Shown: positions 8,557-42,661 of the stretch, piece after piece | Position numbering within the stretch: position 1 is the first letter of the stretch | Layout of the letters: each line of letters starts with the position of its first letter | Assembly (NCBI GenBank): GCA_002269645.1 | Contig: NIVC01000219.1 | Coordinates: 286,262-350,261 of the forward strand | DNA: 64,000 bases | From: Macrostomum lignano | Taxonomy: Eukaryota | Direction: 5' to 3' | The notes under the pieces: model-generated | Databases searched by the model: none | What the model was told of the DNA's origin: nothing | The model's input: the letters and a program-made list of their open reading frames with translations, nothing else | Position numbers and translations under genes: made by a program

Positions 8557-11500
8557 TCAAAAAACTTCTGGGTAAACGATATTTTTGGTTCTTTCGCCGC
8601 ACATTCGAACTCGAACATTACAAACATTTTTTGCTCTGGAAAGTGCAGTGTAGAGCTGTCCATGCGCAAAACAGCTACCTGCAAGGTCAATTCCAACTAC
8701 GTCAAGGGATTGGCCTTGTGCTTTATGAATAGTCATGCAGAAACAGGGTCGTAGAGGAAATTGTAGCCTTCTGAACTTAACAGGTAGATCCAAATTACTT
8801 GGTATCAATGGTACGCGCGGCAACAAAACTGTTTCGCCTTTGAATTGACCAGCAGCAATTTGACATTGTAAGATATTGTTTCGCAATTCCTTAATGATTA
8901 ATCGTGTTCCGTTGCACAGTCGTGGTGGGTTTAAGTTTCGTAGTAGAACTACAGGCATCCCGCATTTGAGACAAAGCCGATGCTTTGGCAATCCAGGTGC
9001 GTCCATACTATTCAGCACTTCAGGTGGATAGTGCGTCAAGTCATCCTCATCCTCGACACTGTCAATTGATCTATATTCGCGATCAACGCCTGGAAATAAA
9101 TCTAAACATGCATCGTTAATTTTATCAACGGAGTCGTTTAGTGGAGCTAAAATGACGCGGCTCTCAAACAACTTCTCCCTGTTTTCGATCCCAGCGAACG
9201 TTGGGTATACAAACCGGATCAAATCAACATCAGTAGCGTCACCAGGCAAAACGATTTCGGGTGGTAGCACGATATTGGCGTCTGAATCACTCGGTATCGA
9301 ACCTTCGCCAACCTAAAATGGTTAGAAACAAAATAGAGTAAAGTATGAGACCCACTGTCACATCCTGCTTTCAATAATTCGAAAGTAACTTACCCGAAGT
9401 AGAAACTCAGCTTACCAGTTTGCCGATTGATCGACAGAGCCACTGTTAAAAAGTCGAATGTTTCGTGTCAAGTGATGTCTTTGAAACTTTAACCACAGAG
9501 CTGATCGACTTACACAGGCGATTACATTGTTTGCGCGTGTTCCATGTTTTACGACCGGCAGCAGCTGCCGAAAGTCGCCACAACAAACAACTGTTATTCC
9601 GCCAAACGGAGCTTCATTATCTCTAATGTCTCTTAAACTTCGATCAACCGCTTCCAGATCTTTTCTGTTAACCATCGATATCTCATCCCACACAATAAGC
9701 TCGGTTTTTCTGAAGATGGACGCCAGTTTGGATTGAGCACCAACGGAACATACTTCCCTTTCGAATCTCATAGTCCTTACCGGAATCTTGAACACCGAAT
9801 GTGCAGTTTGACCCCCAGGAAGCAGGGTGGCCGCAATTCCGGAGGACGCTACAGCAAGAGCCATCTGCCCTCGGCTGCGGACAAACGAAAGGATAACTTC
9901 CAGCAAGTAGGTTTTGCCTGTTCCAGCCGGCGCATCGACAAATTGCAAGTCACCAGTTTTGTTCGAAATGTTAGTAATAACTTGATCGTATATGCTTCTC
10001 TGTTCGTCAGTAAGCAAAGGCAATCGTTCAGTTAAGATGTCAGACTGTTCCATCGGATCGAACTGGATTGGCCCAGCCTTGGGTATTTCGCTTGCTGCTG
10101 GTAGACCATAGTCTGGTAGATTGCGACCTCCCATGAACTTAATCATCGACTGAAGCTCTCGAAGAACCAAGTCGTCACCTCGTCATCATTTAAACCCGAG
10201 TTTCGATAGCGCCAATCTTCACTCATGAACTCGGAGAAATCCCGCCACAGTTCAGTAGCATCAACTGGTTCGCCCCAGACTAAGATGACCGCGAATAAAT
10301 GACGCAGGGCCTTGGGCATTCGTGTCGGAGCGGCCTCATTCAAACTGAGTCTCCAGTGATAGTCGTGCTCCAATAGCTGCCGAGCAACGCATGCAGACCT
10401 ATACGTCGTGTGTTCGACTTCGTCCACAGTGCGCAAATGTTTGTAGCATGTGGGTCCTCTAACGTGCAGCAGCAACAGCCGGAGGTAAAACAAATCGCCC
10501 GTTCTTGGACTCACTGTGTACATGCGGGCAATGTTAGTAGTGCGTTTTACACCACGAAAGCCACTAACTGAAGTTCCTTGCTGAGCACGACGCCATTCCT
10601 TTGCTTCCTTGTGCCATACATAGTAAGATGGTGCTTCGATATAAAGCAACCGTTTAGCAAACTCGTCGACGCAACAGAGTTTGAAAATGCTGTAAGCATT
10701 GAGTCACTTGGTGTGCGTGCTTTGGCGCGTGCATTTTCTTCATTGAAGTAAACCGGCTGCTGACCTGGTAAATGAACGCAAAGTCTGATTACTGCTGGAA
10801 AGCGGTTGTGGATTTGGAAGCCTAAGATTGTATTTACTGCTTCCATTGGGCCTATGTATCTGGACGATAAATACTCGGCGATTTCGTTGACCACGGTTGG
10901 TTCTGCCGGATGCTCCTGTGGCTGCTCCTGTTGTTCTTGTTGCTGTGGCATTCGCTGTTCTGATTGCTGTTCTCGTTGCTGCTGCTGTTGTTCTTGTTGA
11001 TGCTGTTGTGGCTTGGGTTGCTCTTGTGGATCTTGCTTTTCATCGATTCTGGAAACTTTAAATGTTGCCATGTCACCACTCTTTAGCAAATATTTAATTA
11101 TATATTTGACGGCCTTGACGGTCGCACATACTTCAACATTTAAGTGACATGCGAATTCTCTCAATAGATCAGGATTATAAGGCACAACCCATCGATTGTC
11201 CATTTCAACCTGACGACCGCTGCATTGCTTTGTGACAGTGAAGCCTCCCATCACAGGGGACCGTCTCCGGTAAAAAGGATAGCCGGAATCATTCACGAGC
11301 GTCTCAGGTAAAAAGTCTTTTGGAAAATTCTTCGAACAACTATTTTTTCCATGCAAGAACACCTAGGGTTGAGAGCTCCGCAAGGACCATGGATCATGTG
11401 TGTTCGAACCAGCTGATAAAGAACAGGCTGCTTGCTAGGGTCCGGGATCTCTGTTGAGACGAACTGATCATATTTGTCTGGTGTAACTCGATACTGAGGT

Positions 11501-11794
11501 GCCAACCAAAGAAGAATGTGCACGTGTGGAAGGCCACGCTTCTGGTACTCCAATGCGCAGACATGCGCTTGAACTTCGCCGAAATTAGTTTTTAGCCGTT
11601 TGAGTAATTGAGCGAACACGCGCGGCATCTAACCTGTCAGACCGTGCACTTATGGATTCGTTCTGTATACGCTTCCGACTATACTCTAGTTGTTTCTCAA
11701 GCCGCGAATTACGCTCCTCCGCTGTTTCCTGCCGACGACGCAATTTTGCTTCCCGACTCTTTACTAACTCACTCTTTCGCTTCCTCTTCGGCAT
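8557..11794 (-). pseudogene. Helitron RepHel (HUH Rep + PIF1 helicase), frameshifted and internally deleted
   Basis: EYQKRGLPHVHILLW, YIIKYLLK, APAGTGKT, WDEISM, GDFRQLLPV and TIHKAQGQSL motifs; one intron at 9313-9393. Several frameshifts, an in-frame stop at 9412-9414, and a jump near 11620 from the N-terminal basic repeat directly to the region before Rep motif II. Confidence 0.9.
10915..11040 (-). repeat. CAG/CAA-rich poly-Gln tract in the RepHel linker
   Basis: Translates as QEQPKPQQHQQEQQQQQREQQ... Confidence 0.8.
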
Positions 11795-20300: not shown

Positions 20301-20726
20301 TAATCAGGACTGATGCTAGGCAAACGTCGAACTGCAGGTGCAATAGAGTCTACTTCCTGTTCGTTAGGTTGTGTGCTGCAAGCGGCTGGTGATGAGGGCC
20401 TAGCAGGGAGGGTGACAGGACGTAAGCCTGAGAAGGCCCATCAGAGTCCCCATCCTGATTCCAGGCCTGGGAATCCTGCGGAGTACCAGCCAACGTAGTC
20501 TCACCGTCATTGGAAAACCCGTCAAGGTCAGATATCAGAGACTCGGTTATCAAGGAATCCAGACGCCTCGCACAGTTGATGGGGCCCCTCGACATAGCTT
20601 TGCTAGTAGTGCTAGTAGAGTGAGTAGTTCGTTGCGAGTCGCCGGAATTAATGCTGGAATAAATGTGAGGAGATTTCATTTCGCCCGAATAAAATGTAAG
20701 ACGGTCACAAAAAGATAGTGATCATT

Positions 20727-21119
20727 AGTAGTAGTATGTTATAAGGGGCTGCGCCACACTTATTGCTCGGGCGCATTGCGCGCCAGCTCGCTGGTGACTC
20801 AGCCCCTTATAACATACTACTACTACCAGGAGGTCATGGTTGCAATTGTGTGTGATAAATAAATATACATATATCTGTGGGTGAGGGTGTTGAGGGTGAG
20901 GGCATGTGGGGGCATTGGCATGTGGAATATTTCACAGAACACAGATTTTCCGGAATTTTTATACTTTTAAAAAAGGAGGGTGCCCTCGCCCTCATGCCCT
21001 CACTCATTTGAAAAATCACTAAAAACAGGTGAAAAATGACTAAAAACAGGTGAAAATGGTCTGAAAACAGCGATTTTTTGTGATTTTCAAAAATTTTGAA
21101 AAGTGCAATTTTCACGATT
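20727..21119 (+). repeat. Polinton left TIR with terminal hairpin
   Basis: Near-perfect reverse complement of 26139-26532. It is cut on the inside by a Helitron at about 21120. Confidence 0.9.
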
Positions 21120-21733
21120 TCCTATATACTAAAAATGGTCTGTCTGTGTCTATGTGATCGATTAGAGAAAAAATGGCTGTACCGATTTTGTTCGAACTTG
21201 CACTGTTCGATCAGAAATTTTCCCGTGACTGTACATGCATCGTGGCTAAGAAATTTCTTGATGCTAAAGGCATTAAATATTCGAAAAACATGCTTTTTTG
21301 CAAAGGTCAAGCAAACTTTTCGACTTGAAATGCATTGTAAGAATGCTAGACAAAAAACTGACTGGTTGAATTCTGATTCTGAAATAGATTGCATCATAAC
21401 TGAATTGTAACTCCGACTTGAATTGAAAATGCAGTGTGGAAGCGTAGCACCAGACTTGATTTAGATTGCGTAACCATATTGTTAACTGATACTGACTGAC
21501 TGAGAAACTGATTATGTCATAACTGCTTCGTGTGATTTACTCTATGCTTGGATTTTAAAGTGTTGAATTATATAAGTGCAAAATTTGATGTTATCAAAAC
21601 GATGAGAGCTAGCCTAGAGGTGAACAAACTGAACTGTTAAATGCAGCGACGATGGTTCGAATTTTCATAGAGTATAATTTTTTAATTAAAGCTTTTCAAC
21701 GTCAGGAAAACTAAAAGACTTTTTAAAAAGAAT

Positions 21734-22985
21734 CGTCATGTAAAAATCATAGAAGCGTCATGTAAAAAATCATAGAAGCGTCATGTAAACAATCATAGAA
21801 GCGTCATGTAAAAAATCATAGAAGCGTCATGTAAACAATCATAGAAGCGTCATGTAAAAAATCATAGAAGCGTCATGTAAACAATCATAGAAGCGTCATT
21901 TAAACAATCATAGAAGCGTCATGTAAACAATCATAGAAGCGTCATGTAAACAATCATAGAAGCGTCATATAAAAATCATAGAAGCGTCATGTAAACAATC
22001 ATAGAAGCGTCATGTAAACAATCATAGAAGCGTCATGTAAACAATCATAGAAGCGTCATTTAAACAATCATAGAAGCGTCATGTAAACAATCATAGAAGC
22101 GTCATGTAAAAAATCATAGAAGCGTCATGTAAACAATCATAGAAGCGCCATGTAAAAAATCATAGAAGCGTCATGAAACAATCATAGAAGCGTCATGTAA
22201 AAAATCATAGAAGCGTCATGTAAAAAGCATAGAAGCGTCATGTAAAAATCATAGAAGCGTCGTATAAACAATCATAGAAGCGTCATGTAAACAATCATAG
22301 AAGCGTCATGTAAAAAATCATAGAAGCGTCATGTAAACAATCATAGAAGCGTCATGAAACAATCATAGAAGCGTCATGTAAAAAATCATAGAAGCGTCAT
22401 GTAAAAAGCATAGAAGCGTCATGTAAAAATCATAGAAGCGTCGTATAAACAATCATAGAAGCGTCATGTAAACAATCATAGAAGCGTCATGTAAACAATC
22501 ATAGAAGCGTCATGTAAACAATCATAGAAGCGTCATGAAACAATCATAGAAGCGTCATGTAAACAATCATAGAAGCGTCATGTAAAAAGCATAGAAGCGT
22601 CATGTAAAAATCATAGAAGCGTCGTATAAACAATCATAGAAGCGTCATGTAAACAATCATAGAAGCGTCATGTAAAAATCATAAAAGCGTCATGTAAACA
22701 ATCATAGAAGCGTCCTGCAGAAATCGTAGAAGCGTCATGAAATAATCATAGAAGCGTCATGTAAAAAATCATAGAAGCGTCATGTAAACAATCATAGAAG
22801 CGTCATGTAAACAATCATAGAAGCGTCATGTAAACAATCATGGAAGCGTTATGTAAAAAAATCATAGAAGCGTCATGTAAAAAGCATAGAAGCGTCATAT
22901 AAACAATCATAGAAGCGTCATATAAAAAATCATAGAAGTGTCATGTAAAAATCATAGAAGCGTCATGAAAAAATCATAGGAGCCT
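21734..22985 (+). repeat. 23-bp satellite array (ATCATAGAAGCGTCATGTAAACA)n
   Basis: Dozens of head-to-tail copies with period about 23. Confidence 0.97.
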
Positions 22986-23897
22986 CATTTAAAAACTAAT
23001 GAAAGTGTCATTTAAAAAATTAAGAAGCATCATGGTAGAATAAAAGAAGCGTCATGTCAGACATGAAGGGTGTCATGTAAAAATTAAATGCAGCTATAAT
23101 GCTGTGCTGGGGAGAAAAACTGAGACGTAAAGGCTCTCAGAGAATAACTGAGATTACGGGGGGGGGGTTCTGAGATGTCAAAGCAAAAGTCAGAAGCTAC
23201 TTCAAAGTTCATGTACTTTACTCAATTTTTTTATTGCATTATTTGTTGGCTCGCCACGGGGGGGGCGCTGATAGAAGAAGAGTCATGTAAAAAATAAAAG
23301 TAGCACTACGTATACATAAAAGAAAAGTCATGTCGAAGTTAAAAGATTCATTTGGGAATTGCTACGATGTCAAAGCTTGGTGGAAATCGTTATAGTGCTG
23401 TGATTCTTAAAGAAGGAATCACTAAAATGTCAAGGCTTAGGGGAGAAGAATTGCTGAGATTTCAAGGCTTTAGGTTGGGTTAAAGTTAGGTTTAGGTCAG
23501 GTGTGGGTTGAGGGTTATATTTTATCGGATTTCAAGGTTAACAGAATAACAGGGGATTTTTTAGATTTCAAGGTTTATGGGGGCCATCGCTGACATGTTA
23601 AGACTTACGGGGGAATATCTGAGATGTCAAGGTTCACGGGGGTATAAATGAGATTTCAAGGCTAAAGTCAGAAGCTACATGTAGTTTATTGAAAACTTTT
23701 TATTACATTATTTGATGCCTCCTCTGGGGAGGGATCGCTGATAAAAAAAGCGTAATGTAAAAAATAAAATAAGCTTCATGTCGAAGTTAAGAGATTCATT
23801 TGGGAATCTCTACGATGTCGAGGCTTGCAGGGAATCGCTATAATGCTGTAGTAGTGCTATAATGACTCTTAGAGAGAATTACTGAAATTTCAATGCT

Positions 23898-23958
23898 TTA
23901 GGGTTAGGTTAGGGTTAGGGTTAGGGTTAGGGTTAGGGTTAGGCTAGGGTTAGGGTTA
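23898..23958 (+). repeat. Interstitial (TTAGGG)n tract inside the Helitron
   Basis: About nine telomere-type hexamers; the same tract occurs in the other copies. Confidence 0.95.
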
Positions 23959-24119
23959 GAAGGTTGACAGATATTTTTAGATTTCCAAGGCTTATTTGGG
24001 GCATTGCTGAGATGTCAAGGGGGGAAGTTGATATGTTAAAGCTTGTGGGGGGGGGAATTACTGACATGTCAAGGCTTACAAGGTTTGACAGGAGATTTTT
24101 TAAGATTTCAAGGATACAT

Positions 24120-24600
24120 TATCAGAATCTCAGAATGGATTGTGTTGTTGTATTTTTCAACAATAGCTGGCAATGTGTGGAGCCACTTCTGATTACCCTG
24201 TAGATCAAATTCAAACCAGAGTTTATTTGTGAGAGTACGATTGAACCTCTCAATCATTGCATTCTTGGACTCGCCATAAATTGAAAACATCTTGTTAATA
24301 TATTCACCCCTTTCATCCTTCCTTCTAATGTTGTCTTTTGAAAACGAGTATAGCTTGTACATATGCTGATTATAAAACTCCTTGCCTTCATCTACACAAA
24401 GTCTCTCTGATCGTCTTCCTGATTCCTTAAATACTTTTTGGAAAGCTTCTGCAACTTCCGCTCCCGTCTTTGTTTTCAAAGGAACTGCCCAGGCGTAACG
24501 TGTAAAACCATCTATGATAGTTAGAGCATATTTGTAACCTCTTTCGGGCGGTAGGATAATGATATCTGCATGCCAAATTGTGTCTTGCATAGTGAATCAT
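24120..24600 (-). pseudogene. Polinton-type retroviral-like (rve/DDE) integrase, 3'-truncated
   Basis: WHADIIIL...YALTIIDGFTRYAWAVPLKTKTGAEV, LCVDEGKEFYN and KNAMIERFNRTL (D, D, E), then YNNTIHS where the Helitron junction cuts it. Confidence 0.92.
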
Positions 24601-26023
24601 TTTTCTAAATACTCTTGGCTTTCGATATTCTTTATGCAATTTTACTGCATCTTCATAGCTAAGACCCTTACCATAAATTGTTAGACAGTCTATACAATTG
24701 TTGGGGTTGTGAGTATGAATGCCTAATCCAAACCGAACTTTAGCCTTGATAATACGCTTTACTAGATTTCGAATGAGTCTCTCTTTCACAGACAAGTCAC
24801 TGGTTGGAATAGCATCTAAATCAGCTATCATTTTTTCATCAGCTATATGCTTCTTTGCTAGAGCTTCCTCTGGATTTGAAGAAGTGTTTTCAGCATCTCT
24901 ATAGTTTTTGTCATGATAGTAAGCAGTCCAATCGATTGGGTTAATTGGTAGACTGTCATACCGAGGCCGGTCTGTAATTGGATTGAGTCTCTTGTCTAAA
25001 TTTGTACCGGGCAGTTGATCCTCAGTCTTTCGAAAGAGGCTGGACTTTATCTTAAGGCTTCATCAGGATTGACCAGATCCTTCAGCCCCACCCCCATTAA
25101 GTCTCTGAACCTTCTCCATATCCTTGTCAACTTCGTTCGGACTTAGGAGCTTGGCTGCGGATTTCCACCATGTCCTCAAGCTTGTTACCATCGAACCATA
25201 GGTTCGCGGACGAAGTCCGATTGGGAACAGGAATTACCTGTGTTCCTTCAGAAGATTTCTCAACTGAAGTGGTACTTGAGGCTGTTATTGACGTACTAGA
25301 ATCGGACGGAGTTCCCGCAATTTGAAGGTGTCGCCAATCACTAAGCACTTGTTTAATGTTGGTTATAATGTTTTTGTATTGATCACCATAAAGAAATTTC
25401 AATGCAAATTCTCCTGTTATAAGGGTGATTCCATTGTCTAGTAAAATATTCTTTGGTTCCTTTGTAGTTTGATTGATGCATACATAATACAACTGATAGG
25501 TGGGATAAGAATTTTTATAGTCTAATAGTTTCTGATAATTCCTTTCACGACTTGATGAATTGTCCGTGTTATCAGAAGATTTAAGCTCTAATGCAATCTT
25601 TCGCTCAACGTGAACCAGGTCTATCTTTTTTACCTTCTCGAATCCAAAATAATTTTCTGCTAATATTTCATATAGTCTGCCTAGTCTCATTTGAATAACT
25701 TTAATCTTGTGTGAAATTATTAACTCTTCTTGAAAAAGATCATGAAGAATTTGATCATGCCCAACCTTATCATCAATTGGTTTCAGAAGAATTTCTCGAA
25801 TTGTTTGCTCCATTTTTACTATAGAAACTTTAACAAGTGCTTATTTGATGACTAGCAAGGACATTGACTTCCTCACTCAGGCCACTACGTAACCTGCAAA
25901 AGAATACCCTGGAATATGAAATTCGCCAGGATATTTTCCAGTGGTGAAGATGGGTGGTAGTTTTGTTATAGCTGACTGAATATCTAAGGCATTTCCTAGA
26001 AATATTGGTTTACTGAAGGCCAT
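24600..26023 (-). CDS. Polinton/adintovirus-type phospholipase A2 (parvovirus VP1u-like). Exon 1 is 26023-25892; exon 2 starts at 25011 and runs into the integrase N-terminus
   Basis: Joined reading MAFSK...GEFHIPGYSFAG|PGTNLDKRL...PINPIDWTAYYHDKNY...ADEKMI...KAKVRFGLG contains the Ca-binding loop (Y..GPG) and the catalytic HD. Exon 2 is open from 25011 and in frame with ORF 24427-24831. Confidence 0.88.
25012..25891 (-). ncRNA. Group I self-splicing intron, subgroup IC1, 880 nt
   Basis: The 5' exon ends in U and the intron ends in G. P1 CAGGU/GCCUG has U.G at the splice site; P2.1 GCUAGUC/GAUUGGC; P3 CACCUUCA/UGGGGGUG. Conserved elements: P AAAUUGCGGGAA, Q AAUCCGCAGC, R GUUCAGAGACU, S CUUAAGAUAAAGUC. 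P6 CUCCUAAGUCC/GGAUAUGGAG. Removing it restores AG|PG in frame. Confidence 0.92.
25127..25813 (-). CDS. Intron-encoded PD-(D/E)xK restriction-endonuclease-like protein (putative homing endonuclease)
   Basis: Intact 228-aa ORF starting in the P2.1 loop, with IQMRLG.LYE, KIDL, IALELKS and DNTDNSSS motifs. The last ~75 codons overlap the ribozyme core. Confidence 0.72.
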   Translation of the reverse strand: MEQTIREILLKPIDDKVGHDQILHDLFQEELIISHKIKVIQMRLGRLYEILAENYFGFEKVKKIDLVHVERKIALELKSSDNTDNSSSRERNYQKLLDYKNSYPTYQLYYVCINQTTKEPKNILLDNGITLITGEFALKFLYGDQYKNIITNIKQVLSDWRHLQIAGTPSDSSTSITASSTTSVEKSSEGTQVIPVPNRTSSANLWFDGNKLEDMVEIRSQAPKSERS

Positions 26024-26138
26024 TTTATATATATAAAATTTACTATCGTTAAATTAGATGACACTTTCATATTGTATATACCTGAAATTGCATTAAATTG
26101 ACCCGAGGATCCAACTTTTCTCATGGTTTTAGAGCTGG

Positions 26139-26532
26139 AATCGTGAAAATTGCACTTTTTCAAAATTTTTGAAAATCACAAAAAATCGCTGTTTTCAGAC
26201 CATTTTCACCTGTTTTCAGTCATTTTTCACTTATTTTTAGTGATTTTCAAAATGAGTGAGGGCATGAGGGCGAGGGCACCCCCCCTTTTTAAAAGTATAA
26301 AAATTCCGGAAAATCTGTGTTCTGTGAAATATTCCACATGCCAATGCCCCCACATGCCCTCACCCTCAACACCCTCACCCACAGATATATGTATATTTAT
26401 TTATCACACACAATTGCAACCATCACCTCCTGGTAGTAGTAGTATGTTATAAGGGGCTGAGTCACCAGCGAGCTGGCGCGCAATGCGCCCGAGCAATAAG
26501 TGTGGCGCAGCCCCTTATAACATACTACTACT
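26139..26532 (-). repeat. Polinton right TIR with terminal hairpin
   Basis: Ends ...CATACTACTACT, followed by the TSD ATCATT. Confidence 0.9.
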
Positions 26533-27499
26533 ATCATTGATGATGTCAGCCTACCATGTAACGCAATTGGCCGTTGAATGTGACCATATCTCACACCTAT
26601 CGTTATATGAGTAGTTGTTTACATCTAGCTATCGTGAGTGGGTTCTAGATCTGTTAGAAATGGACTCCACGGGTATTAAATATGATTGATGCCATATCAG
26701 CTTTAAAGCTAGGAGCTTCCATTGAAGAGATTATATTTGGCGATTATTGTTCTGGGATGTTGGCCCTCAGTGTGTTTCTGCAAAGCGTGTAGAACAAAGT
26801 AAATTGAACTAAATACGGAAACAAACCATACGTTATATACTTCGAGTATTTGAACAGCTAGATAATGAGTTCACATTTCCAGGTTAGAAATTAAAGTTAA
26901 AATTTATTTTTAAACGAAGGTAATGGCATCAATAAGCTGGAAAAAAGAATACTAGCTATCCCGTATAAAACGAAATGGCCAGAAAACTGGCTGTGACCGT
27001 CCCACTTGTGACCGATGTCAGAATCGCTGGGGACTGTTTAATGAGACCATTTGTGTTCATGAAAATAAGGGTCGCATGTTACTGTCCACTGTGACCATGC
27101 TTTGTGAACTTTTTGGTCAGGGTCACACCGCTACCGTTTAACTGTGACCGTATTTATGACCATTTTGTTCAAGGTCAAAATTAGTAACAAGAAACTAATC
27201 TATATATTAAAACAAGCAGTTAAAACCCGTGTATTTTTAACCCGGGGAATTCCAATCCCCGGAACTATTTTTGCATGTATTCTGAAATCTGAGGTCATAC
27301 TTGTTATATACTTGTTAACAAAAACTTGTTAATAGTTAGTAGAATAGACGTAAAAATAAAATGGAGTACAATCGTGCAAAATAAGGATTTGAAGCAAACA
27401 GTTGAAATTGTTGGCTGGGGTGCTGCGGAGAATTTCGGGCTATGTCTGTCTGGCTCAAAAACATGTATTGGCAAACTCTGGCCCTTGGATCCTTTGAAA

Positions 27500-27940: not shown

Positions 27941-28449
27941 ACAAAATACTTCAGGCTAAAGCAAATTAAGAGTTACTCAAGCGAATATGGGTCCCCCCTC
28001 CAAAGTCAATTGAGTACTTGCCCACAACGCTACTCGGTAGGACGAATCGAATGCAAACTGACGGTGCCATCGATCCAGCGGCTTGGACTCCTGCTGATTG
28101 TTTAGACTTTGGTAACACCGGTGGAGAAACAGGTTCGAATTCTCGTAGGAGATCAGACAGGCTGGCATCCGCCATCATTTCAGCCATTTTTTCCAGCGAC
28201 TGGAACAGGCCTGTGCGGTGGCTGCTGCTCGAGCGTGGCTTTTTCATTCGTCTCCTCCGGCTCCAACTCGTGCTCCTCAAAAAAAGCCGTGTCCAATTTT
28301 GGCGGAGAAAGCCTTGTCCAATTCTGGCGGAGCAACGAAATCAGCGGCAGCACCATCAACGTTATAGCTATGTACCGGCGTCTGAAGACCGAGAGCAACA
28401 GCCGCTGGAACGTCAACGCTTGCAGCTTGATGGTCAATGGTGGCATGTC

Positions 28450-29160
28450 CAAGAGCAGCAGCTGGACGGTCGATGCCGGCAGGTCCAGGAGCAGCAGCTG
28501 AATGGTCGATGCCGGCAGGTCCAGGAGCAGCAGCTGGATGGTCGATGCCGGCAGGTCCAGGAGCAGCAGCTGGATGGTCGATGCCGGCAGGTCCAGGAGC
28601 AGCAGCTGGATGGTCGATGCCGGCAGGTCCAGGAGCAGCAGCTGGACGGTCGATGCCGGCAGGTCCAGGAGCAGCAGCTGGGTAGTCGATGCCGGCAGGT
28701 CCAGGAGCAGCAGCTGGATGGTCGATGCCGGCAGGTCCAGGAGGGTCTATGAAATTTGCTTGCGAGAAGTTTGCTTGCCGAAGTTTGCTTGCGGGACTTT
28801 TGCTTGCGGAAATTTGCTTGCCGAAGTCTGCTTGCCGAATTTTGCTTGCGGAATTGAGCCAGGAGCAGCAGCTGGATGGTCGATGCCGGCAGGTCCAGGA
28901 GCAGCAGCTGGATGGTCGATGCCGGCAGGTCCAGGAGGGTCTATGAAATTTGCTTGCGAGAAGTTTGCTTGCCGAAGTTTGCTTGCGGACTTTTGCTTGC
29001 GGAAATTTGCTTGCCGAAGTCTGCTTGCCGAATTTTGCTTGCGGAATTGAGCCAGGAGCAGCAGCTGGATGGTCGATGCCGGCAGGTCCAGGAGCAGCAG
29101 CTGGATGGTCGATGCCGGCATTTCCAGGAGCAGCAGCAGCAGCAGCTGGATGGTCGACGC
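28450..29160. repeat. 36-bp GC-rich minisatellite with a nested 194-bp tandem duplication
   Basis: Unit CCAGGAGCAGCAGCTGGATGGTCGATGCCGGCAGGT. The block gagggtctatg occurs at 28741 and 28935. Confidence 0.9.
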
Positions 29161-30686: not shown

Positions 30687-33600
30687 CTAGCAATCTACGC
30701 CCCCGTTGGGGAGCCAAAGAAATGCAATACACGTTTTTTTAATAAGCTACATGTATCCTTGAAATCTTAAAAAATCTTCTGTCAAACCTTGTAAGCCTTG
30801 ACATGTCAGTTATCCCCCCCCCACAAGCTTTAACATATCAACTTCCCCCCTTGACATCTCAGCAATGCCCCCAATAAGCCTTGGAAATCTAAAAATATCT
30901 GTCAACCTTCTAACCCTAACCCTAGCCTAACCCTAACCCTAACCCTAACCCTAACCCTAACCCTAACCTAACCCTAAAGCATTGAAATTTCAGTAATTCT
31001 CTCTAAGAGTCATTATAGCACTACTACAGCATTATAGCGATTCCCTGCAAGCCTCAACATCGTAGGGATTCCCAAATGAATCTCTTAACTTCGACATGAA
31101 GCTTCTTTTATTTTTTACATTACGCTTTTTTATCAGCGATCCCTACCCTGAGGAGGCATCAAATAATGTAATAAAAAGTTTTCAATAAACTACATGTAGC
31201 TTCTGACTTTAGCCTTGAAATCTCATTTATACCCCCGTGAGCCTTGACATCTCAGCTATTCCCCCCGTAAGCCTTGACATGTCAGCAATGGCCCCCATAA
31301 ACCTTGAAATCTAAAAAATCCCCTGTTAACCATGAAACCCGATAAAATATAACCCTCAACCCACACCTGACCTAAACCTAACTTTAACCCAACCTAAAGC
31401 CTTGAAATCTCAGCAATTCTTCTCCCCTAAGCCTTGACATTTTAGTGATTCCTTCTTTAAGAATAACAGCACTATAACGATTTCCACCAAGCTTTGACAT
31501 CGTAGCAATTCCCAAATGAATCTTTCAACTTCGACATGACTTTTATTTTATGTATACATAGTGCTACTTTTATTTTTTACATGACTCTTCTTCTATCAGC
31601 GCCCCCCCGTGACATGAACTTTGAAGTAGCTTCTGACTTTTGCTTTGACATCTCAGAAACCCCCCCGTAATCTCAGTTATTCTCTGAGAGCCTTTACGTC
31701 TCAGTTTTTCTCCCCAGCACAGCATTATAATTGCATTTAATTTTTACATGAACCCTTCATGTCTGACATGACGTTTCTTTTATTCTACCGTGACGCTTCT
31801 TAATTTTTTAAATGACACTTTCATTAGTTTTTAAATGAGGCTTCTATGATTTTTTCTTGACGCTTCTATGATTTTTACATGACGCTTCTATGATTTTTAT
31901 ATGACGCTTCTATGATTGTTTACATGACGCTTCTATGATTGTTTACATGACGCTTCTATGATTGTTTACATGACGCTTCAACGATTTTTTACATGACACT
32001 TCTATGATTGTTTACATGACGCTTCTATGATTTTTTACATGGCGCTTCTATGATTGTTTACATGACGCTTCTATGATTGTTTACATGACGCTTCTATGAT
32101 TGTTTACATGACGCTTCTACGATTTTTATATGACGCTTCTATGATTTTTTAAATGGCGCTTCTATGATTTTTTAATGACACTTCTATGATTTTTTACATG
32201 ACGCTTCTATGATTTTTTACATGACGCTTCTATGATTGTTTACATGACGCTTCTATGATTGTTTACATGACGTTTCTATGATTGTTTACATGACGCTTCT
32301 ATGATTGTTTACATAAAGCTTCTATGATTGTTTACATGACGCTTCTATGATTGTTTACATGACGCTTCTATGATTGTTTACATGACGCTTCTAAGATTTT
32401 TTACATGACGCTTCTACGATTTTTTACATGACGCTTCTATGATTGTTTACATGACGCTTCTATGATTTTTTAAATGACGCTTCTATGATTTTTATATGAC
32501 GCTTCTATGATTTTTTAATGACGCTTCTATGATTGTTTAAATGACGCTTCTATGATTGTTTACATGACGCTTCTATGATTGTTTACATGACGCTTCTATG
32601 ATTGTTTACATGACGCTTCTATGATTGTTTACATGACGCTTCTAAGATTTTTCACATGATGCTTCTACGATTTTTTACATGACGCTTCTATGATTGTTTA
32701 CATGACGCTTCTATGATTTTTTAAATGACGCTTCTATGATTTTTATATGACGCTTCTATGATTTTTTACATGACGCTTCTTTGATTGTTTACATGACGCT
32801 TCTACGATTTTTATATGACGCTTCTATGATTTTTTAAATGACGCTTTTATGATTTTTTAATGACGCTTCTATGATTTTTTAAATGACGCATCTATGATTT
32901 TTATATGACGCTTCTATGATTTTTTAAATGACGCTTCTATGATTGTTTACATGACGCTTCTATGATTTTTTACATGACTCTTCTATGATTTTTTAAATGA
33001 CGCTTCTATTATTTTTTAATGACGCTTCTATGATTGTTCTATGATCTTGCTTGCTTGCAATCGATTAGAGATAAAATGGCTGGACCGATTTTGTTCGAAC
33101 TTGCACTGTTCGATCAGAAATTTTCCCGTGACTGTACATGCATCGTGGCTAAGAAATTGTTCGATGCTAAAGGCATTAAATATTCGAAAAACATGCTTTT
33201 TTGCAAAGGTCAAGCAAACTTTTCGACTTGAAATGTATTGTAAGAATGCTAGACAAAAAACTGACTGGTTGAATTCTGATTCTGAAATAGATTGCATCAT
33301 AACTGAATTGTAACTCCGACTTGAATTGAAAATGCAGTGTGGAAGCGTAGCACCAGACTTGATTTAAATTGCGTAACCATATTGTTAACTGATACTGACT
33401 GACTGAGAAACTGATTATGTCATAACTGCTTCGTGTGATTTACTCTATGCTTGGATTTTCAAGTGTTGAATTATATAAGTGCAAATTTTGATGTTATCAA
33501 AACGATGAGAGCTAGCCTAGAGGTAAACAGACTGAACTGCTAAATGCAGCGACGATGGTTCAAATTTTCATAAAGTATAATTTTTTTAATTAAAGCTTTT

Positions 33601-36600
33601 CAACGTCAGGAAAACTAAAAGACTTTTTAAAAACAAGCGTCATGTAAAAATCATAGAAGCGTCATTTACAAAATCATAGAAGCACCATTTAAAAAATCAT
33701 AGAAGCGTCACGTAAAAATATCATAGAAGCGTCATGTAAACAATCATAGAAGCGTCATTTAAAAAATCGTAGAAGCGTCATGTAAAAAATCATAGAAGCG
33801 TCATATAAAAATCATAGAAGCGTCATATAAAAATCATAGAAGCGTCATTTAAAAAATCATAGAAGCGTCATGTAAACAATCATAGAAGCGTCATGTAAAA
33901 AATCGTAGAAGCGTCATGTAAAAAATCTTAGAAGCGTCATGTAAACAATCATAGAAGCGTCATGTAAACAATCATAGAAGCGTCATGTAAACAATCATAG
34001 AAGCTTTATGTAAACAATCATAGAAGCGTCATGTAAACAATCATAGAAACGTCATGTAAACAATCATAGAAGCGTCATGTAAAAAATCATAGAAGCGTCA
34101 TGTAAAAAATCATAGAAGTGTCATTAAAAAATCATAGAAGCGCCATTTAAAAAATCATAGAAGCGTCATATAAAAATCGTAGAAGCGTCATGTAAACAAT
34201 CATAGAAGCGTCATGTAAACAATCATAGAAGCGTTATGTAAACAATCATAGAAGCGCCATGTAAAAAATCATAGAAGCGTCATGTAAACAATCATAGAAG
34301 TGTCATGTAAAAAATCGTTGAAGCGTCATGTAAACAATCATAGAAGCGTCATGTAAACAATCATAGAAGCGTCATGTAAACAATCATAGAAGCGTCATAT
34401 AAAAATCATAGAAGCGTCATGTAAAAATCATAGAAGCGTCAAGAAAAAATCATAGAAGCCTCATTTAAAAACTAATGAAAGTGTCATTTAAAAAATTAAG
34501 AAGCGTCACGGTAGAATAAAAGAAACGTCATGTCAGACATGAAGGGTTCATGTAAAAATTAAATGCAATTATAATGCTGTGCTGGGGAGAAAAACTGAGA
34601 CGTAAAGGCTCTCAGAGAATAACTGAGATTACGGGGGGGTTTCTGAGATGTCAAAGCAAAAGTCAGAAGCTACTTCAAAGTTCATGTCACGGGGGGGGCG
34701 CTGATAGAAGAAGAGTCATGTAAAAAATAAAAGTAGCACTATGTATACATAAAATAAAAGTCATGTCGAAGTTGAAAGATTCATTTGGGAATTGCTACGA
34801 TGTCAAAGCTTGGTGGAAATCGTTATAGTGCTGTTATTCTTAAAGAAGGAATCACTAAAATGTCAAGGCTTAGGGGAGAAGAATTGCTGAGATTTCAAGG
34901 CTTTAGGTTGGGTTAAAGTTAGGTTTAGGTCAGGTGTGGGTTGAGGGTTATATTTTATCGGGTTTCATGGTTAACAGGGGATTTTTTAGATTTCAAGGTT
35001 TATGGGGGCCATTGCTGACATGTCAAGGCTTACGGGGGAATAGCTGAGATGTCAAGGCTCACGGGGGTATAAATGAGATTTCAAGGCTAAAGTCAGAAGC
35101 TACATGTAGTTTATTGAAAACTTTTTATTACATTATTTGATGCCTCCTCAGGGTAGGGATCGCTGATAAAAAAGCGTAATGTAAAAAATAAAAGAAGCTT
35201 CATGTCGAAGTTAAGAGATTCATTTGGAAATCCCTACGATGTTGAGGCTTGCAGGGAATCGCTATAATGCTGTAGTAGTGCTATAATGACTCTTAGAGAG
35301 AATTACTGAAATTTCAATGCTTTAGGGTTAGGTTAGGGTTAGGGTTAGGGTTAGGGTTAGGGTTAGGGTTAGGCTATGGTTATGGTTAGAAGGTTGACAG
35401 ATATTTTTAGATTTCCAAGGCTTATTGGGGGCATTGCTGAGATGTCAAGGGGGGAAGTTGATATGTTAAAGCTTGTGGGGGGATAACTGACATGTCAAGG
35501 CTTACAAGGTTTGACAGAAGATTTTTTAAGATTTCAAGGATACATGTAGCTTATTAAAAAAACGTGTATTGCGTTTCTTTGGCTCCCCAACGGGGGGCGT
35601 AGATTGCTAGTGACGCTTCTATGATTGTTTACATGACGCTTCTATGATTGTTTACATGACGCTTCTATGATTGTTTACATGACGCTTCTATGATTGTTTA
35701 CATGACGCTTCTAAGATTTTTTACATGACGCTTCTACGATTTTTTACATGACGCTTCTATGATTGTTTACATGACGCTTCTATGATTTTTTAAATGACGC
35801 TTCTATGATTTTTATATGACGCTTCTATGATTTTTTACATGACGCTTCTACGATTTTTTAAATGACGCTTCTATGATTGTTTACATGACGCTTCTATGAT
35901 ATTTTTACGTGACGCTTCTATGATTTTTTAAATGGTGCTTCTATGATTTTGTAAATGACGCTTCTATGATTTTTACATGACGCTTGTTTTTAAAAAGTCT
36001 TTTAGTTTTCCTGACGTTGAAAAGCTTTAATTAAAAAAATTATACTTTATGAAAATTTGAACCATCGTCGCTGCATTTAGCAGTTCAGTCTGTTTACCTC
36101 TAGGCTAGCTCTCATCGTTTTGATAACATCAAAATTTGCACTTATATAATTCAACACTTGAAAATCCAAGCATAGAGTAAATCACACGAAGCAGTTATGA
36201 CATAATCAGTTTCTCAGTCAGTCAGTATCAGTTAACAATATGGTTACGCAATTTAAATCAAGTCTGGTGCTACGCTTCCACACTGCATTTTCAATTCAAG
36301 TCGGAGTTACAATTCAGTTATGATGCAATCTATTTCAGAATCAGAATTCAACCAGTCAGTTTTTTGTCTAGCATTCTTACAATACATTTCAAGTCGAAAA
36401 GTTTGCTTGACCTTTGCAAAAAAGCATGTTTTTCGAATATTTAATGCCTTTAGCATCGAACAATTTCTTAGCCACGATGCATGTACAGTCACGGGAAAAT
36501 TTCTGATCGAACAGTGCAAGTTCGAACAAAATCGGTCCAGCCATTTTTTCTCTAATCGATCACATAGACACAGACAGACCATTTTTAGTATATATAGAGA

Positions 36601-37389: not shown

Positions 37390-39855
37390 GCTTCTCAGCT
37401 AGTGCAATAATCCTTGGTTTATTAATAGCAATAATCCTTGATTAATCAAGTGCAATAATCCTTGGTTTATCAAGTGCAATAATCCTTGGTTTATCAAGTG
37501 CAGTAATCTTTGGCTTATCAAGTGCAATAATCCTTGGTTTATCAAGTGCAATAATCCTTTGTTTATCAAGTGCAATAATCCTTGGTTTATCAAGTGCAAT
37601 AATCCTTGGTTTATTAAGTGCAATAATCCTTGGTTTATTAAGTGCAATAATCCTTGGTTTATCTAGCGCAGTAATCCTTGGCTTATCAGGTGCAATAATC
37701 CTTGGTTTATCAAGTGCAATATTTGTTTATCAAGTGCAATAATCCTTGGTTTATCAAGTGAAATAATCCTTGGTTTATCAACTGCAATAATCCTTGGTTT
37801 ATCAAGCGCAGTAATCTTTGGCCTATCAAGTGCAATAATCCTTGGTTTATCAAGTGCAGTAATCCTTGGCCTATCAAGTGCAATAATCCTTGGTTTATCA
37901 AGTGCAATAATCCTTGGTTTATCAAGTGTAATAATCCTTGGTTTATCAAGTGCAATAATCCTTGGCTTATCAACTGCAATAATCCTTGGTTTATCAAGTG
38001 CAATAATCCTTGGTTTATCAAGCGCAGTAATCCTTGGCCTATCAAGTGCAATAATCCTTGGCTTATCAAGTGCAATAATCCTTGGTTTATCAAGTGCAAT
38101 AATCCTTGGTTTATCAAGTGCAGTAATCCTTGGCCTATCAAGTGCAATAATCCTTGGTTTGCCAAGAGCAATAATCCTTAGTTTATCGAGTGCAGTAATC
38201 CTTAGTTTTCCAAGTGCAGTAATCCTTGGTTTATTAAGAGCAATAATCCTTGGCTTATCGAGTGCAGTAATCCTTGGTTTGCCAAGAGCAATAATCCTTG
38301 GTTTATCAAGTGCAATAATCCTTGGTTTATCAAGTGCAATAATCCTTGGTTTATCAAGTGCAATAATCCTTGGTTTATCAGATGCAATAATCTTTGGCTT
38401 ATCAACTGCAATAATCCTTGGTTTATCAAGTGCAATAATCCTTGGCTTATCAAGTGCAATAATCCTTGGTTTATCAAGTGCAATAATCCTTGGTTTATCA
38501 AGCGCAGTAATCTTTGGCCTATCAAGTGCAATAATCCTTTGTTTATCAAGTGCAATAATCCTTGGTTTATCAAGTGCAATAATCTTTGGTTTATCAGATG
38601 CAATAATCCTTGGCTTATCAACTGCAATAATCATTGGTTTATCAAGTGCAATAATCCTTGGCTTATCAAGTGCAATAATCCTTGGTTTATCAAGTGCAAT
38701 AATCCTTGGTTTATCAAGCGCAGTAATTTTTGGCCTATCAAGTGCAATAATCCTTGGTTTATCAAGTGCAGTAATCCTTGGCCTATCAAGTGCAATAATC
38801 CTTGGTTTATCAAGTGCAATAGTCTTTGGTTTATCGAGTGCAGTAATCCTTAGTTTTCCAAGTGCAGTAATCCTTGGTTTATTAAGAGCAATAATCCTTG
38901 GTTTATCGAGTGGAGTAGTCCTTGGTTTATTAATATCAATAATCCTTGAATAATCCAGTGCATTAATCCTTGGCTTATCAAGTGCAACATTCTTTACTAT
39001 CAAGTGCAATAATCCATGGCTTATCAAGTGCAATAATCCTTGGCTTATCAAGTGCAATAATCCTTGGTTTATCAAGTGCAATAATCCTTTGTTTATCAAG
39101 TGCAATAATCCTTTGTTTATCAAGTGCAATAATCCTTTGTTTATCAAGTGCAATAATCCTTGGTTTATCAAGCGCAGTAATCCTTGGCTTATCAAGTGCA
39201 ATAATCCTTGGTTTATCAAGTGCAATAATCCTTGGTTTATCAAGCGCAGTAATCTTTGGCCTATCAAGTGCAATAATCCTTGGTTTATCAAGTGCAGTAA
39301 TCCTTGGCCTATCAAGTGCAATATTCCTTGGTTTATCAAGTGCAATAGTCCTTGGTTTATCGAGTGCAGTAATCCTTGGTTTTCCAAGTGCAATAATCCT
39401 TGGCTTCTTGAGTGCAGTAATCCTTGGTTTGCCAAGAGCAATAGTCCTTGGTTTATCGAGTGCAGTAATCCTTGGTTTTCCAAGTGCAGTAATCCTTGGT
39501 TTATTAATAGCAATAATCCTTGGCTTCTTGAGTGCAGTAATCCTTGGTTTGCCAAGAGCAATAGTCCTTGGTTTATCGAGTGCAGTAATCCTTGGTTTTC
39601 CAAGTGCAATAATCCTTGGCTTCCTGAGTGCAGTAATCCTTGGTTTGCCAAGAGCAATAGTCCTTGGTTTATCGAGTGCAGTAATCCTTGGTTTTCCAAG
39701 TGCAGTAATCCTTGGTTTATTAATAGCAATAATCCTTGGCTTCTTGAGTGCAGTAATCCTTGGTTTGCCAAGAGCAATAGTCCTTGGTTTATCGAGTGCA
39801 GTAGTCCTTGGTTTATTAATAGCAATAATCCTTGGCTTATCGAGTGCAGTAATCT
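37390..39855. repeat. 24-bp satellite array (AAGTGCAATAATCCTTGGTTTATC)n
   Basis: About 2.5 kb of period-24 repeats; it generates the spurious 8-aa-repeat ORFs. Confidence 0.97.
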
Positions 39856-41525: not shown

Positions 41526-42661
41526 TTAACGTTTGTTAAACGTTTTTGACGTTTGTAACGCAAGAATTTTTTGTATTTTTTTGCGAATAAACTTGAAAAG
41601 TACAAAGTGAAACTTATGAACATGGCATTAAAAGTACAACCGATATGTCACGTATACATAGCGTGTGCAATGGCTGCATGTGACCAGATGAGTTCCTTTA
41701 ATACTCTACGTTAGTCTATAGTCGCAGCCCTCTGATTCGCTCATTCCTGCCCTCAAATCTATAGTCAGAACAATCAGTTCGGCTCTATTTCCTTAGCCTT
41801 TGCGCTTTGCCACAGACTATTCATATTTGTTTCGCCAAAGATTAAGAAATGAAGTAAGACAAAAGCTTCATTCAGGGCCTTCGCCTTAGTTAAAATTGAC
41901 ATCTTGTGAGTTTCGTATATTATTCAACTTTCAATATATGGAAGACGAAGGCCCCATCGCAAGTTGATGCAAATCGTTTTTTATGAGCTTACAGTCCACA
42001 GTTGTCACAGGTGACTTGAGATATTTTTGATTTTTGAAAAAAAGACTGTCACTCGTAGTTTGCGTAAAAATCCATATACTAAAATTCACTCTAATGTTAA
42101 GTTTTTGCGAACCTTGGAAAACTAAAAACAAAGTTGTTTCGTCTTTTGCATAAATTTGCGATATAAAATAAGTAAAGTTTTTACACAAATTATGATGAAA
42201 TTTCAGGGGAAAAATAAAAGACAAAATTAACTGCTCATCAAAGATTGAATTCATTAAAAGCAGTGCAAAAGAAGGTTTGTTTCAAAAGTTACTTTCGGCT
42301 ATATGAAATTGCCTTAAAATACAAATTAACTGTAAAGTGCAAATTGACTGTAAAAATTTATACAATGAATAAAATAAGCCTAATTGAGCTTCAACATAAA
42401 GTTCATTAGCTATTAGCTCGTACTCACTGCCATGCAATATCTACGCTTCGTTAGAAATGAGGTTGGGGCAATAAGTTTCCTGCGATTCTTTTAGGAATGA
42501 GAGCTATTGACAGCTATTGCTTTAGAGAATGAGAGCTATTACTTAAGAGAGATGGGAAATAATTATTCTATTTTTCCTTAAAAATAAATGAATATACTTT
42601 CTAGCCTTTTGCAATAATAAGGAAAATTATTGCTCACCCCTCATTTTTTACGATAAATAAA

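What the first reader, a model, noticed from the sequence alone, without database searches (positions are those of the whole stretch)
25012..25891. Group IC1 self-splicing intron inside a Polinton/Maverick gene in an animal-type nuclear genome
Seen: the PLA2 Ca-binding loop GYSFAG|PGTN is split by 880 nt that follow the group I rule (exon ends in U, intron ends in G). P1 with the U.G wobble, P2.1, P3 (8 bp), P4, a P5abc-like extension, P6, P7, P8, a P9 hairpin and near-canonical IC1 P/Q/R/S sequences can all be read. Known: IC1 introns occur mainly in nuclear rDNA of fungi, algae and protists and in some large algal viruses; animal group I introns are known from mitochondria of a few basal lineages. 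Inference: a virus-like Polinton carried a ribozyme into a protein-coding gene in an animal nucleus. The shared TIRs, TSD and neighbouring Helitrons argue against contamination.
Basis: partly seen in the sequence, partly recalled or inferred. Interest (0 to 1): 0.97.

Follow-up and report, generated by a model that had tools for sequence, protein, structure and literature searches.

The report
Mobile group I intron in Maverick gene
A real self-splicing (group I) intron carrying its own restriction-enzyme-like homing nuclease interrupts the phospholipase-integrase gene of a gutted Maverick/Polinton element in repeat-rich nuclear DNA that is probably from an invertebrate, where such introns are not otherwise known.

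Summary
Rfam RF00028 matches the minus strand at 25404-25021 with 87.9 bits (gathering score 50, E 4.5e-21). Intron-free relatives of the host protein read straight through ...YSFAG|PGTNL..., and another relative carries the intron's 3' end at the same site.

Its first ~165 residues are an Eco47II-family PD-(D/E)XK nuclease (Pfam above threshold, AF2 pLDDT ~97, closest folds EcoO109I and AvaII). Its tail is read-through over ribozyme helices P3-P6b.

The intron-free junction reads AGGT|CCC. That is the GGNCC-type site of those enzymes, and any Gly-Pro codon pair produces it. I infer a homing target that the intron destroys.

The host gene is a PLA2-integrase fusion with one frameshift. It sits in a 5.8-kb remnant with 393-bp TIRs, (AGT)n ends and a 6-bp TSD. 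The remnant has no polymerase or capsid genes.

IC1 membership and animal origin are plausible but unproven. I rate this a new variant of a known kind.

The parts
25012..25891 (-). Group I intron, 880 nt, from the first intron base after U25892 to the terminal G25012
   Evidence: The junction is fixed by intron-free relatives P0018 and P0019.
25021..25404 (-). Ribozyme core matched by RF00028 (P3-P9 plus upstream hairpins)
   Evidence: 87.9 bits, E 4.5e-21, model positions 1-253 of 253.
25878..25896 (-). P1: five exon-guide pairs with the U25892.G25882 wobble at the 5' splice site, extended by three intron pairs
   Evidence: MFE fold; sequence.
25854..25877 (-). Hairpin after P1, candidate P2
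   Evidence: MFE and centroid.
25829..25843 (-). 5' arm of the long-range helix that encloses most of the ORF, candidate P2.1
   Evidence: this is the longest inverted repeat in the intron, 15 nt and 93% complementary. It is paired in the MFE fold.
25342..25356 (-). 3' arm of candidate P2.1, just upstream of P3
25170..25304 (-). Large multi-hairpin extension of P5 (scaffold domain)
   Evidence: Insertion in the model alignment; fold.
25127..25813 (-). Intron ORF, 228 codons plus stop. Residues 1-165 form an Eco47II-family PD-(D/E)XK nuclease. Residues 166-228 are an unstructured tail read through P3-P6b, with the stop in the P6b loop.
24108..26023 (-). Host gene: N-terminal parvovirus-type PLA2 domain fused to an rve integrase. 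It is interrupted by the intron and broken by one frameshift in the integrase part.
25892..26023 (-). Exon 1 (44 codons from ATG; ends YSFAG)
   Evidence: 80% identical to the N-terminus of P0018.
24811..25011 (-). Exon-2 part of the PLA2-like domain (PGTNL ... HD motif)
   Evidence: PF08398 profile positions 13-64. P0018 carries the whole domain at 28.4 bits.
24360..24584 (-). rve integrase core domain
   Evidence: PF00665, 41.6 bits.
20727..26532 (.). Maverick/Polinton-type remnant, 5,806 bp
   Evidence: TIRs, end motif and TSD. No polymerase, capsid, ATPase or protease ORF.
20727..21119 (+). Left TIR; starts with AGT repeats
   Evidence: 97.7% identical to the right TIR.
26139..26532 (-). 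Right TIR
20721..20726 (+). Target-site duplication ATCATT, left copy
26533..26538 (+). Target-site duplication ATCATT, right copy
21123..23544 (+). Partial copy of an unrelated TIR/satellite element lying inside the remnant
   Evidence: A full copy lies at 33060-36594.

Best explanation
This is a mobile group I intron of IC-type architecture. It was inserted between the Gly and Pro codons of the calcium-binding loop of a PLA2-integrase gene belonging to a Maverick/Polinton-type element. Shown: the ribozyme core is complete, and the 5' splice site has the U.G wobble in P1. The intron ends in G, and removing exactly these 880 nt recreates the motif that intron-free relatives carry. Shown: the intron encodes an intact nuclease of the Eco47II restriction-enzyme family whose body lies inside the loop of a peripheral helix (candidate P2.1). 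Its reading frame then runs on, as an unstructured tail, through P3-P6b. Inferred: the RNA splices itself out of the transcript by the usual guanosine-initiated two-step reaction, so the insertion costs the host gene little. Inferred: the nuclease cuts intron-free copies of the gene at the GGNCC-type sequence that every Gly-Pro codon pair creates (here AGGT|CCC). Repair from an intron-bearing copy then spreads the intron, and insertion splits the site and so protects intron-bearing copies. This particular copy lies in a gutted, frameshifted remnant and is most likely a recent fossil of that process.
For: Ribozyme: RF00028 at 87.9 bits, full length. P3, P4, P5, P6 and P6a are all standard pairs in the alignment. 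P1 with the wobble and the P2/P2.1 candidates come. Splice sites: P0018 and P0019 read through the junction without the intron. P0018 covers its residues 1-128 as two pieces equal to exon 1 and exon 2, and its PLA2 domain (28.4 bits) spans the junction. Same-site intron in a relative: the first residues of P0016 mirror the translated last 48 nt of the intron and then continue as exon 2 at 72% identity. Nuclease: PF09553 at 29.4 bits against a cut-off of 25.9, and 69 of 80 relatives hit the same family. D65, E76 and K78 are nearly invariant. AF2 pLDDT is ~97 for residues 1-165 and ~50 for the tail. The best PDB folds are EcoO109I and AvaII. Relatives also sit in group I introns: 4 of 15 keep the tail in the same frame, and 6 of 15 read the same P3/P4 nucleotides in another frame. 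Target: the junction is AGGT|CCC, while AvaII cuts GGWCC, EcoO109I cuts RGGNCCY and Eco47II homologues go with GGNCC (PMC7337904, PMC10305163). A bacterial relative lies next to a C5 methylase, which is the ancestral restriction-modification setting.
Against: There is no RNA evidence of splicing. The MFE z-scores are unremarkable (-1.6 to -1.7), and P2, P2.1 and P7 rest on one sequence without covariation. P10 is at best one or two pairs. A nuclease with only 5-bp specificity would be harmful to any genome, so the real target must be longer or the enzyme otherwise restrained; neither was tested. How an ORF inside an intron of a presumably Pol II-transcribed gene would be translated is unknown. 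This copy's host gene is frameshifted and the element has lost its other genes, so present-day activity of this copy is doubtful.
Confidence: 0.8

Rival explanations
1. The identification is the same, but the host is not an animal. The window would come from a protist, fungus or other eukaryote, making this one more case of the group I introns already reported in integrated Polinton-like viruses of protists.
For: No host marker gene lies in the window. The Helitron helicase's best named hits reach only 48% identity and include plants and oomycetes as well as animals. All relatives of the intron ORF and host gene come from metagenomes or read-set assemblies. RF00028 introns in protist PLVs are published (PMC12220804).
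Against: The top named Helitron hits are arthropods, molluscs and rotifers. The element has the (AGT)n end motif and 6-bp TSD described for Mavericks of animals (PMC8097293). PLA2 genes are a trait of animal-associated adintoviruses (PMC8502044). One Helitron carries an STPR domain, which to my knowledge is an animal-type domain.
Confidence: 0.25
2. The intron ORF is not a homing nuclease. It would be a decaying or re-purposed restriction-enzyme gene, for example a splicing helper, and the GGNCC junction would be coincidence.
For: No activity data exist. A 5-bp cutter is an unlikely homing enzyme. A fixed-register GGNCC arises by chance about once in 256.
Against: The ORF is intact and every residue invariant across the closest relatives (alignment A2) is present in it. 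The catalytic D/E/K triad is kept across 80 relatives. Both intron-bearing and intron-free alleles exist among relatives, which is the pattern homing produces.
Confidence: 0.12
3. It is an assembly chimera or contamination with fungal, algal or protist rDNA carrying a group I intron.
For: Nuclear group I introns are otherwise known only from rDNA (PMC3679873).
Against: There is no rRNA hit anywhere in the window. Both flanks are the two halves of one PLA2 domain in the correct order and phase. An independent relative carries the intron at the same codon boundary. The gene lies inside a TIR/TSD-bounded element.
Confidence: 0.02
4. It is an ordinary spliceosomal intron, or a non-splicing insertion that merely resembles a ribozyme.
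For: The host is eukaryotic nuclear DNA, where spliceosomal introns are the rule.
Against: The 3' boundary that restores the conserved motif ends in TG, not AG. The nearest AG-ending alternative would destroy the GPG loop that relatives keep. The covariance-model score is far above chance.
Confidence: 0.01

Closest known systems
RF00028 group I introns in integrated Polinton-like viruses of protists (Paulinella, Desmodesmus, Rhodomonas; PMC12220804)
   Same: [quoted passage not shown]
   Different: Those introns are 309-376 nt with no recognised endonuclease, lie in a short gene next to the capsid gene, and their hosts are protists. This one is 880 nt, carries a nuclease ORF, sits in a PLA2-integrase gene, and its element has Maverick-type ends.
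Nuclear rDNA group I introns of subgroups IC1/IE with His-Cys box homing endonucleases (e.g. the Physarum and Didymium introns; PMC3679873)
   Same: IC-like core with P2/P2.1 and an elaborate scaffold domain. The nuclease gene is inserted in a peripheral helix in the sense orientation, and the intron is optional among relatives.
   Different: The host gene is protein-coding, not rRNA. The nuclease is PD-(D/E)XK, not His-Cys box. There are no P9.1/P9.2 helices.
I-Ssp6803I, the PD-(D/E)XK homing endonuclease of a cyanobacterial tRNA group I intron (PMC3424549, PMC3943268)
   Same: A restriction-enzyme fold recruited as an intron-encoded homing nuclease.
   Different: It belongs to a different Pfam family (PF11645 against PF09553). 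No sequence or fold match to it was returned. Its host is bacterial.
Type II restriction endonucleases Eco47II, AvaII and EcoO109I
   Same: Family membership (PF09553) and closest folds. Their GGNCC-type sites match the intron-free junction.
   Different: Those enzymes work with a partner methylase in bacteria, as the MAG relative does. Here there is no methylase and the gene lies inside a ribozyme.
PLA2X genes of adintoviruses and Polintons (PMC8502044, PMC3671162)
   Same: A parvovirus-type PLA2 domain in a Polinton-class element.
   Different: PLA2X is fused to an adenovirus pX-like domain. Here, and in relatives P0016/P0017, the PLA2 domain is fused to the integrase.

Membership tests
Group I intron (RF00028) | Covariance-model score at or above the curated threshold | tested here: met
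   87.9 bits against 50; full-length match.
Group I intron (RF00028) | 5' exon ends in U paired with G in P1; intron ends in G | tested here: met
   U25892.G25882 in an 8-pair P1; G25012 is the last intron base.
Group I intron (RF00028) | Removal restores the host reading frame and a conserved motif | tested here: met
   Tested exon by exon against intron-free P0018 and P0019.
Group I intron (RF00028) | Helices supported by covariation among relatives | not tested
   The relatives' DNA was not fetched; only one RNA sequence was available.
Group I intron (RF00028) | Self-splicing activity | not testable with these tools
   No transcript data were available.
Subgroup IC1 | P2 and P2.1 present | tested here: inconclusive
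   A hairpin follows P1 and a 15-nt long-range helix lies before P3. This rests on a single sequence.
Subgroup IC1 | Complex P4-P6 scaffold (P5abc-type extension) | tested here: met
   A 133-nt multi-hairpin insertion in P5. The criterion is from PMC3679873.
Subgroup IC1 | Peripheral P9.1/P9.2 as in the model IC1 intron | tested here: not met
   Only 8 nt lie between P9 and the terminal G. To my knowledge this feature is not universal in IC1.
Subgroup IC1 | Best score with a subgroup-specific model | not testable with these tools
   Rfam holds one model for all group I introns.
Polinton/Maverick | Long TIRs, 6-bp TSD, (AGT)n//(ACT)n end motif | tested here: met
   393-bp TIRs at 97.7% identity, TSD ATCATT, ends starting with AGT repeats. 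The criteria are from PMC8097293.
Polinton/Maverick | rve-type integrase | tested here: met
   PF00665, 41.6 bits; the gene carries one frameshift.
Polinton/Maverick | Protein-primed family B polymerase | tested here: not met
   No such ORF in the element or the window. This copy is a remnant.
Polinton/Maverick | Capsid proteins, packaging ATPase, maturation protease | tested here: not met
   None found (same calls).
Eco47II restriction endonuclease family (PF09553, PD-(D/E)XK) | Pfam score above the curated cut-off | tested here: met
   29.4 bits against 25.9; 69 of 80 relatives also match.
Eco47II restriction endonuclease family (PF09553, PD-(D/E)XK) | Catalytic D ... E-x-K and restriction-enzyme fold | tested here: met
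   D65, E76 and K78 are at least 90% conserved. The confident AF2 model has EcoO109I and AvaII as top PDB matches.
Eco47II restriction endonuclease family (PF09553, PD-(D/E)XK) | Partner methylase (restriction-modification pair) | tested here: not met
   No methylase in the element. The bacterial relative has one adjacent.
Homing endonuclease (functional class) | Encoded within a self-splicing intron, with intron-free alleles among relatives | tested here: met
Homing endonuclease (functional class) | Cleaves the intron-free allele at or near the insertion site | not testable with these tools
   Inferred only, from the GGNCC-type junction.
Known nuclear or PD-(D/E)XK homing nucleases (His-Cys box; I-Ssp6803I family) | Sequence or fold match to the family | tested here: not met
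   No Pfam, PDB-sequence or Foldseek hit to either.
Parvovirus-type PLA2 domain (PF08398) | Profile match plus calcium loop and HD catalytic motif | tested here: inconclusive
   Exon 2 alone scores 21 bits against 23.9, and exon 1 alone gives nothing. Intron-free P0018 scores 28.4. The motifs YxGxG (split) and HD are present. The joined protein was not searched, by rule.

The most novel reading that the evidence does not exclude
A lineage of mobile group I introns armed with Eco47II-type nucleases circulates among Maverick/adintovirus-like elements of invertebrates. It homes into the GGN|CCN of a conserved Gly-Pro pair. This would place self-splicing ribozymes in protein-coding, non-ribosomal genes of animal nuclear genomes, and would add a seventh structural lineage to the known homing endonucleases.
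Probability: 0.45. Interest if true: 0.88.

Novelty: new variant of a known kind. Interest (0 to 1): 0.76.

Why it matters
Reviews state that all known nuclear group I introns sit in rDNA and that all nuclear homing nucleases are of the His-Cys type (PMC3679873). The only exceptions I found are bare ribozymes in Polinton-like viruses of protists (PMC12220804). Vertebrate Maverick genes are reported to have no introns (PMC8097293).

If the host is an animal, this is a route by which a ribozyme and its nuclease reach animal nuclear DNA. Whatever the host, it shows a type II restriction-enzyme family turned into an intron-borne homing nuclease.

The target hypothesis is unusually clean. The family's GGNCC site is what every Gly-Pro codon pair encodes, so synonymous change cannot remove the target from a catalytic loop.

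Tried and rejected
- **Alternative 3' splice site at 25021, where the Rfam alignment ends.** It is also in frame, but it is rejected because P0018 and P0019 lack the three extra residues.
- **Spliceosomal reading.** Rejected on the boundaries and on loss of the conserved motif.
- **rDNA chimera.** There is no rRNA hit.
- **Second ribozyme, such as a capping ribozyme, or any other RNA family in 24800-26100.** None at E <= 1.
- **Nuclease against phage genomes (tblastn).** No match.
- **Nuclease against PDB by sequence.** Only noise on the low-complexity tail.
- **Nuclease against BFVD folds.** Nothing at E <= 1e-3.
- **Alignment A3 as a locus query.** It was too diverse. A2 found a single bacterial MAG locus with no intron.
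- **Host identification through the Helitron helicase.** The hits lean towards animals but are not decisive.
- **Cluster look-up of relatives.** It gave no names and one run accession only.
- **GGNCC avoidance.** One site in the element against 6.7 expected. The satellite content makes the shuffle control weak, so I treat this as a hint only.

Full report
**1. Observation**

A whole-window Rfam scan gives one hit. RF00028 (group I catalytic intron) matches the minus strand at 25404-25021 with 87.9 bits against a gathering score of 50, E 4.5e-21. All 253 model positions are matched and the hit is untruncated. A permissive rescan of 24800-26100 finds nothing else.

On the minus strand the upstream exon ends in U (25892). 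The segment 25891-25012 is 880 nt long and ends in G.

From the model alignment I read these helices in window coordinates:
- P3: 25330-25323 with 25096-25089.
- P4: 25319-25314 with 25161-25156.
- P5: 25309-25305 with 25169-25165.
- P6, P6a and P6b: between 25155 and 25109.
- P8: 25087-25056.
- P9: a GAAA-capped hairpin at 25039-25020.

P7 cannot be drawn in the nested model. By eye it pairs 25105/25103-25099 with 25047-25042. All pairs in P3, P4, P5, P6 and P6a are standard. A 133-nt insertion extends P5.

**2. Splice sites**

I tested the splice model exon by exon, by reference.

Exon 1 (26023-25892) reads 44 codons from ATG and ends YSFAG. The frame after 25011 starts PGTNL and reaches the HD catalytic motif.

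A search with the exon-2 frame found four relatives:
- P0018 and P0019 run through YSFAG|PGTNL (VG|PG in P0019) with no interruption.
- P0018 maps back to the window over its residues 1-128 as two pieces with the outer bounds of exon 1 and exon 2.
- The PF08398 match of P0018 (28.4 bits, above threshold) spans the junction at residues 44/45.
- P0016, at 72% identity, begins with residues that mirror the window's last 48 intron bases read in the exon-2 frame, then continues as exon 2.

So a relative carries the intron at the same codon boundary, and both intron-bearing and intron-free alleles exist. The in-frame alternative acceptor at 25021 is excluded by the same alignment.

**3. 5' region**

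In the fold of the whole intron, P1 is an 8-pair hairpin with U25892 opposite G25882. A second hairpin follows at 25877-25854. A long-range helix then joins 25843-25829 to 25356-25342, just before P3.

That helix is the longest inverted repeat in the intron, at 15 nt and 93% complementarity, and it encloses the body of the ORF. I take the two as P2 and P2.1. This rests on one sequence, and the fold z-scores are unremarkable.

Only 8 nt follow P9, so there is no P9.1/P9.2. By the criterion in PMC3679873 the architecture is IC1-like, with a complex scaffold domain, P2 and P2.1. Subgroup membership could not be tested.

**4.

An ATG-to-stop ORF of 228 codons runs from 25813 to 25127 on the intron strand.

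- **Family.** It matches PF09553 (Eco47II restriction endonuclease) at 29.4 bits against a cut-off of 25.9.
- **Close relatives.** Fifteen relatives at 46-61% identity exist. All come from metagenome or read-set assemblies and none is named.
- **Wider family.** An exhaustive HMMER search finds 211 relatives. Almost all match only residues 1-160. Of 80 aligned relatives, 69 hit PF09553, and D65, E76 and K78 are at least 90% conserved.
- **Fold.** AlphaFold2 gives pLDDT ~97 for residues 1-165 and ~50 for 166-228. The best PDB matches are EcoO109I, AvaII and Ecl18kI.
- **Other homing-nuclease families.** There is no match to the I-Ssp6803I family, to His-Cys box proteins or to other homing-nuclease families. 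Nothing was found in phage genomes or BFVD.

The tail is RNA, not protein. The four closest relatives keep it in frame, and it is the translation of P3/P4 and P4'/P6. Six further relatives show the peptide obtained when the same window nucleotides are read in another frame. So 10 of the 15 relatives' ORFs also run into a group I core. The window's stop codon lies in the P6b loop.

**5. Target hypothesis (inference)**

Exon 1 ends AGGT and exon 2 starts CCCG, so an intron-free allele reads AGGT|CCC.

The known recognition sites are:
- AvaII: G^GWCC (PMC7337904).
- EcoO109I: RG^GNCCY (PMC7337904).
- Eco47II homologues: paired with GGNCC (PMC10305163).

The junction fits all three. Gly-Pro is always GGN-CCN, so synonymous change cannot remove the site. 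The intron sits at GGN^CC and splits it. The chance of this at a fixed register is about 1 in 256.

A bare 5-bp specificity would be harmful to a genome, so a longer target is expected; this was not tested. In a bacterial MAG, a relative lies directly upstream of a C5 cytosine methylase and has no intron nearby. That is the ancestral restriction-modification setting.

**6. Host gene and element**

P0016 and P0017 continue from the PLA2 region into an rve integrase, so the host gene is a PLA2-integrase fusion. PLA2 domains in Polintons and adintoviruses are known, but there they are fused to a pX-like domain (PMC3671162, PMC8502044).

In the window the integrase part aligns to these relatives in two frames. 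That means one frameshift and no internal stop within the pieces. A sequencing error cannot be excluded.

The gene lies in a 5,806-bp unit, 20727-26532, with these features:
- 393-bp TIRs at 97.7% identity.
- Ends starting with AGT repeats.
- A perfect 6-bp TSD, ATCATT.

These match the end motif and TSD described for Mavericks (PMC8097293). The unit has no polymerase, capsid, ATPase or protease ORF. About 2.4 kb of it is a partial copy of an unrelated TIR/satellite element. It is a remnant.

**7. Host organism**

This is unresolved. The window is made of transposons and satellites.

- The Helitron helicase's best named hits are arthropods, molluscs and rotifers at 48% identity or less, with plants and oomycetes further down.
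- CpG observed/expected is 0.88, which is not vertebrate-like. Nothing suggests a human contig, so that rule was not triggered.
- The Maverick end motif, the PLA2 gene and an STPR domain lean towards an invertebrate.

I put animal origin at about 0.75.

**8. Literature**

- All known nuclear group I introns were reported to be in rDNA, with His-Cys nucleases (PMC3679873).
- Vertebrate Maverick genes have no introns (PMC8097293).
- RF00028 introns without a recognised nuclease have been reported in Polinton-like viruses integrated in protist genomes (PMC12220804).
- Six homing-nuclease families are recognised (PMC3943268, PMC3384342), and none of them is PF09553.
Noticed in passing
window 7200-11630 and 42660-49340, minus strand: Two Helitron copies (Helitron_like_N, PIF1, Pif1 2B, RPA-type OB, and an STPR domain in one copy), each read in several ORF pieces.
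   Followed up: partly
window 33060-36594; partial copies at 21123-23544 and 30817-33038: A 3.5-kb TIR element whose arms are 100% identical. Each arm consists of a ~600-nt unique module plus a 23-bp satellite array. One partial copy lies inside the Maverick-type remnant.
   Followed up: partly
window 37401-39854: A 24-bp satellite of about 102 copies produces a spurious 720-codon ORF with no family match.
   Followed up: yes
window 28422-29130: GC-rich 36-bp and 193-bp tandem repeats give open frames on both strands.
   Followed up: no
window 20727-26532: GGNCC occurs once in the element against 6.7 expected from mononucleotide shuffles (1.2% of shuffles are as low). The window as a whole is not depleted. 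This could reflect site avoidance or just AT-rich satellites.
   Followed up: partly
window 25170-25304: The P5 extension carries two extra hairpins compared with the closest relatives. They appear as two insertions in the ORF tail in alignment A2.
   Followed up: no
L001 2001-3300: A bacterial MAG relative of the intron nuclease, apparently in pieces, lies directly upstream of a C5 cytosine methylase (PF00145, 224 bits). No group I intron is present.
   Followed up: yes
proteins P0005 and P0291-P0304: The second group of nuclease relatives (cluster of 30) sits on metagenome contigs of up to 65 kb. That is too long for a Polinton, so this intron family may also live in larger viruses or cellular genomes.
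   Followed up: no
window 2113-2691: An ORF with a weak PNMA/gag-like match (21.7 bits, below the cut-off).
   Followed up: no
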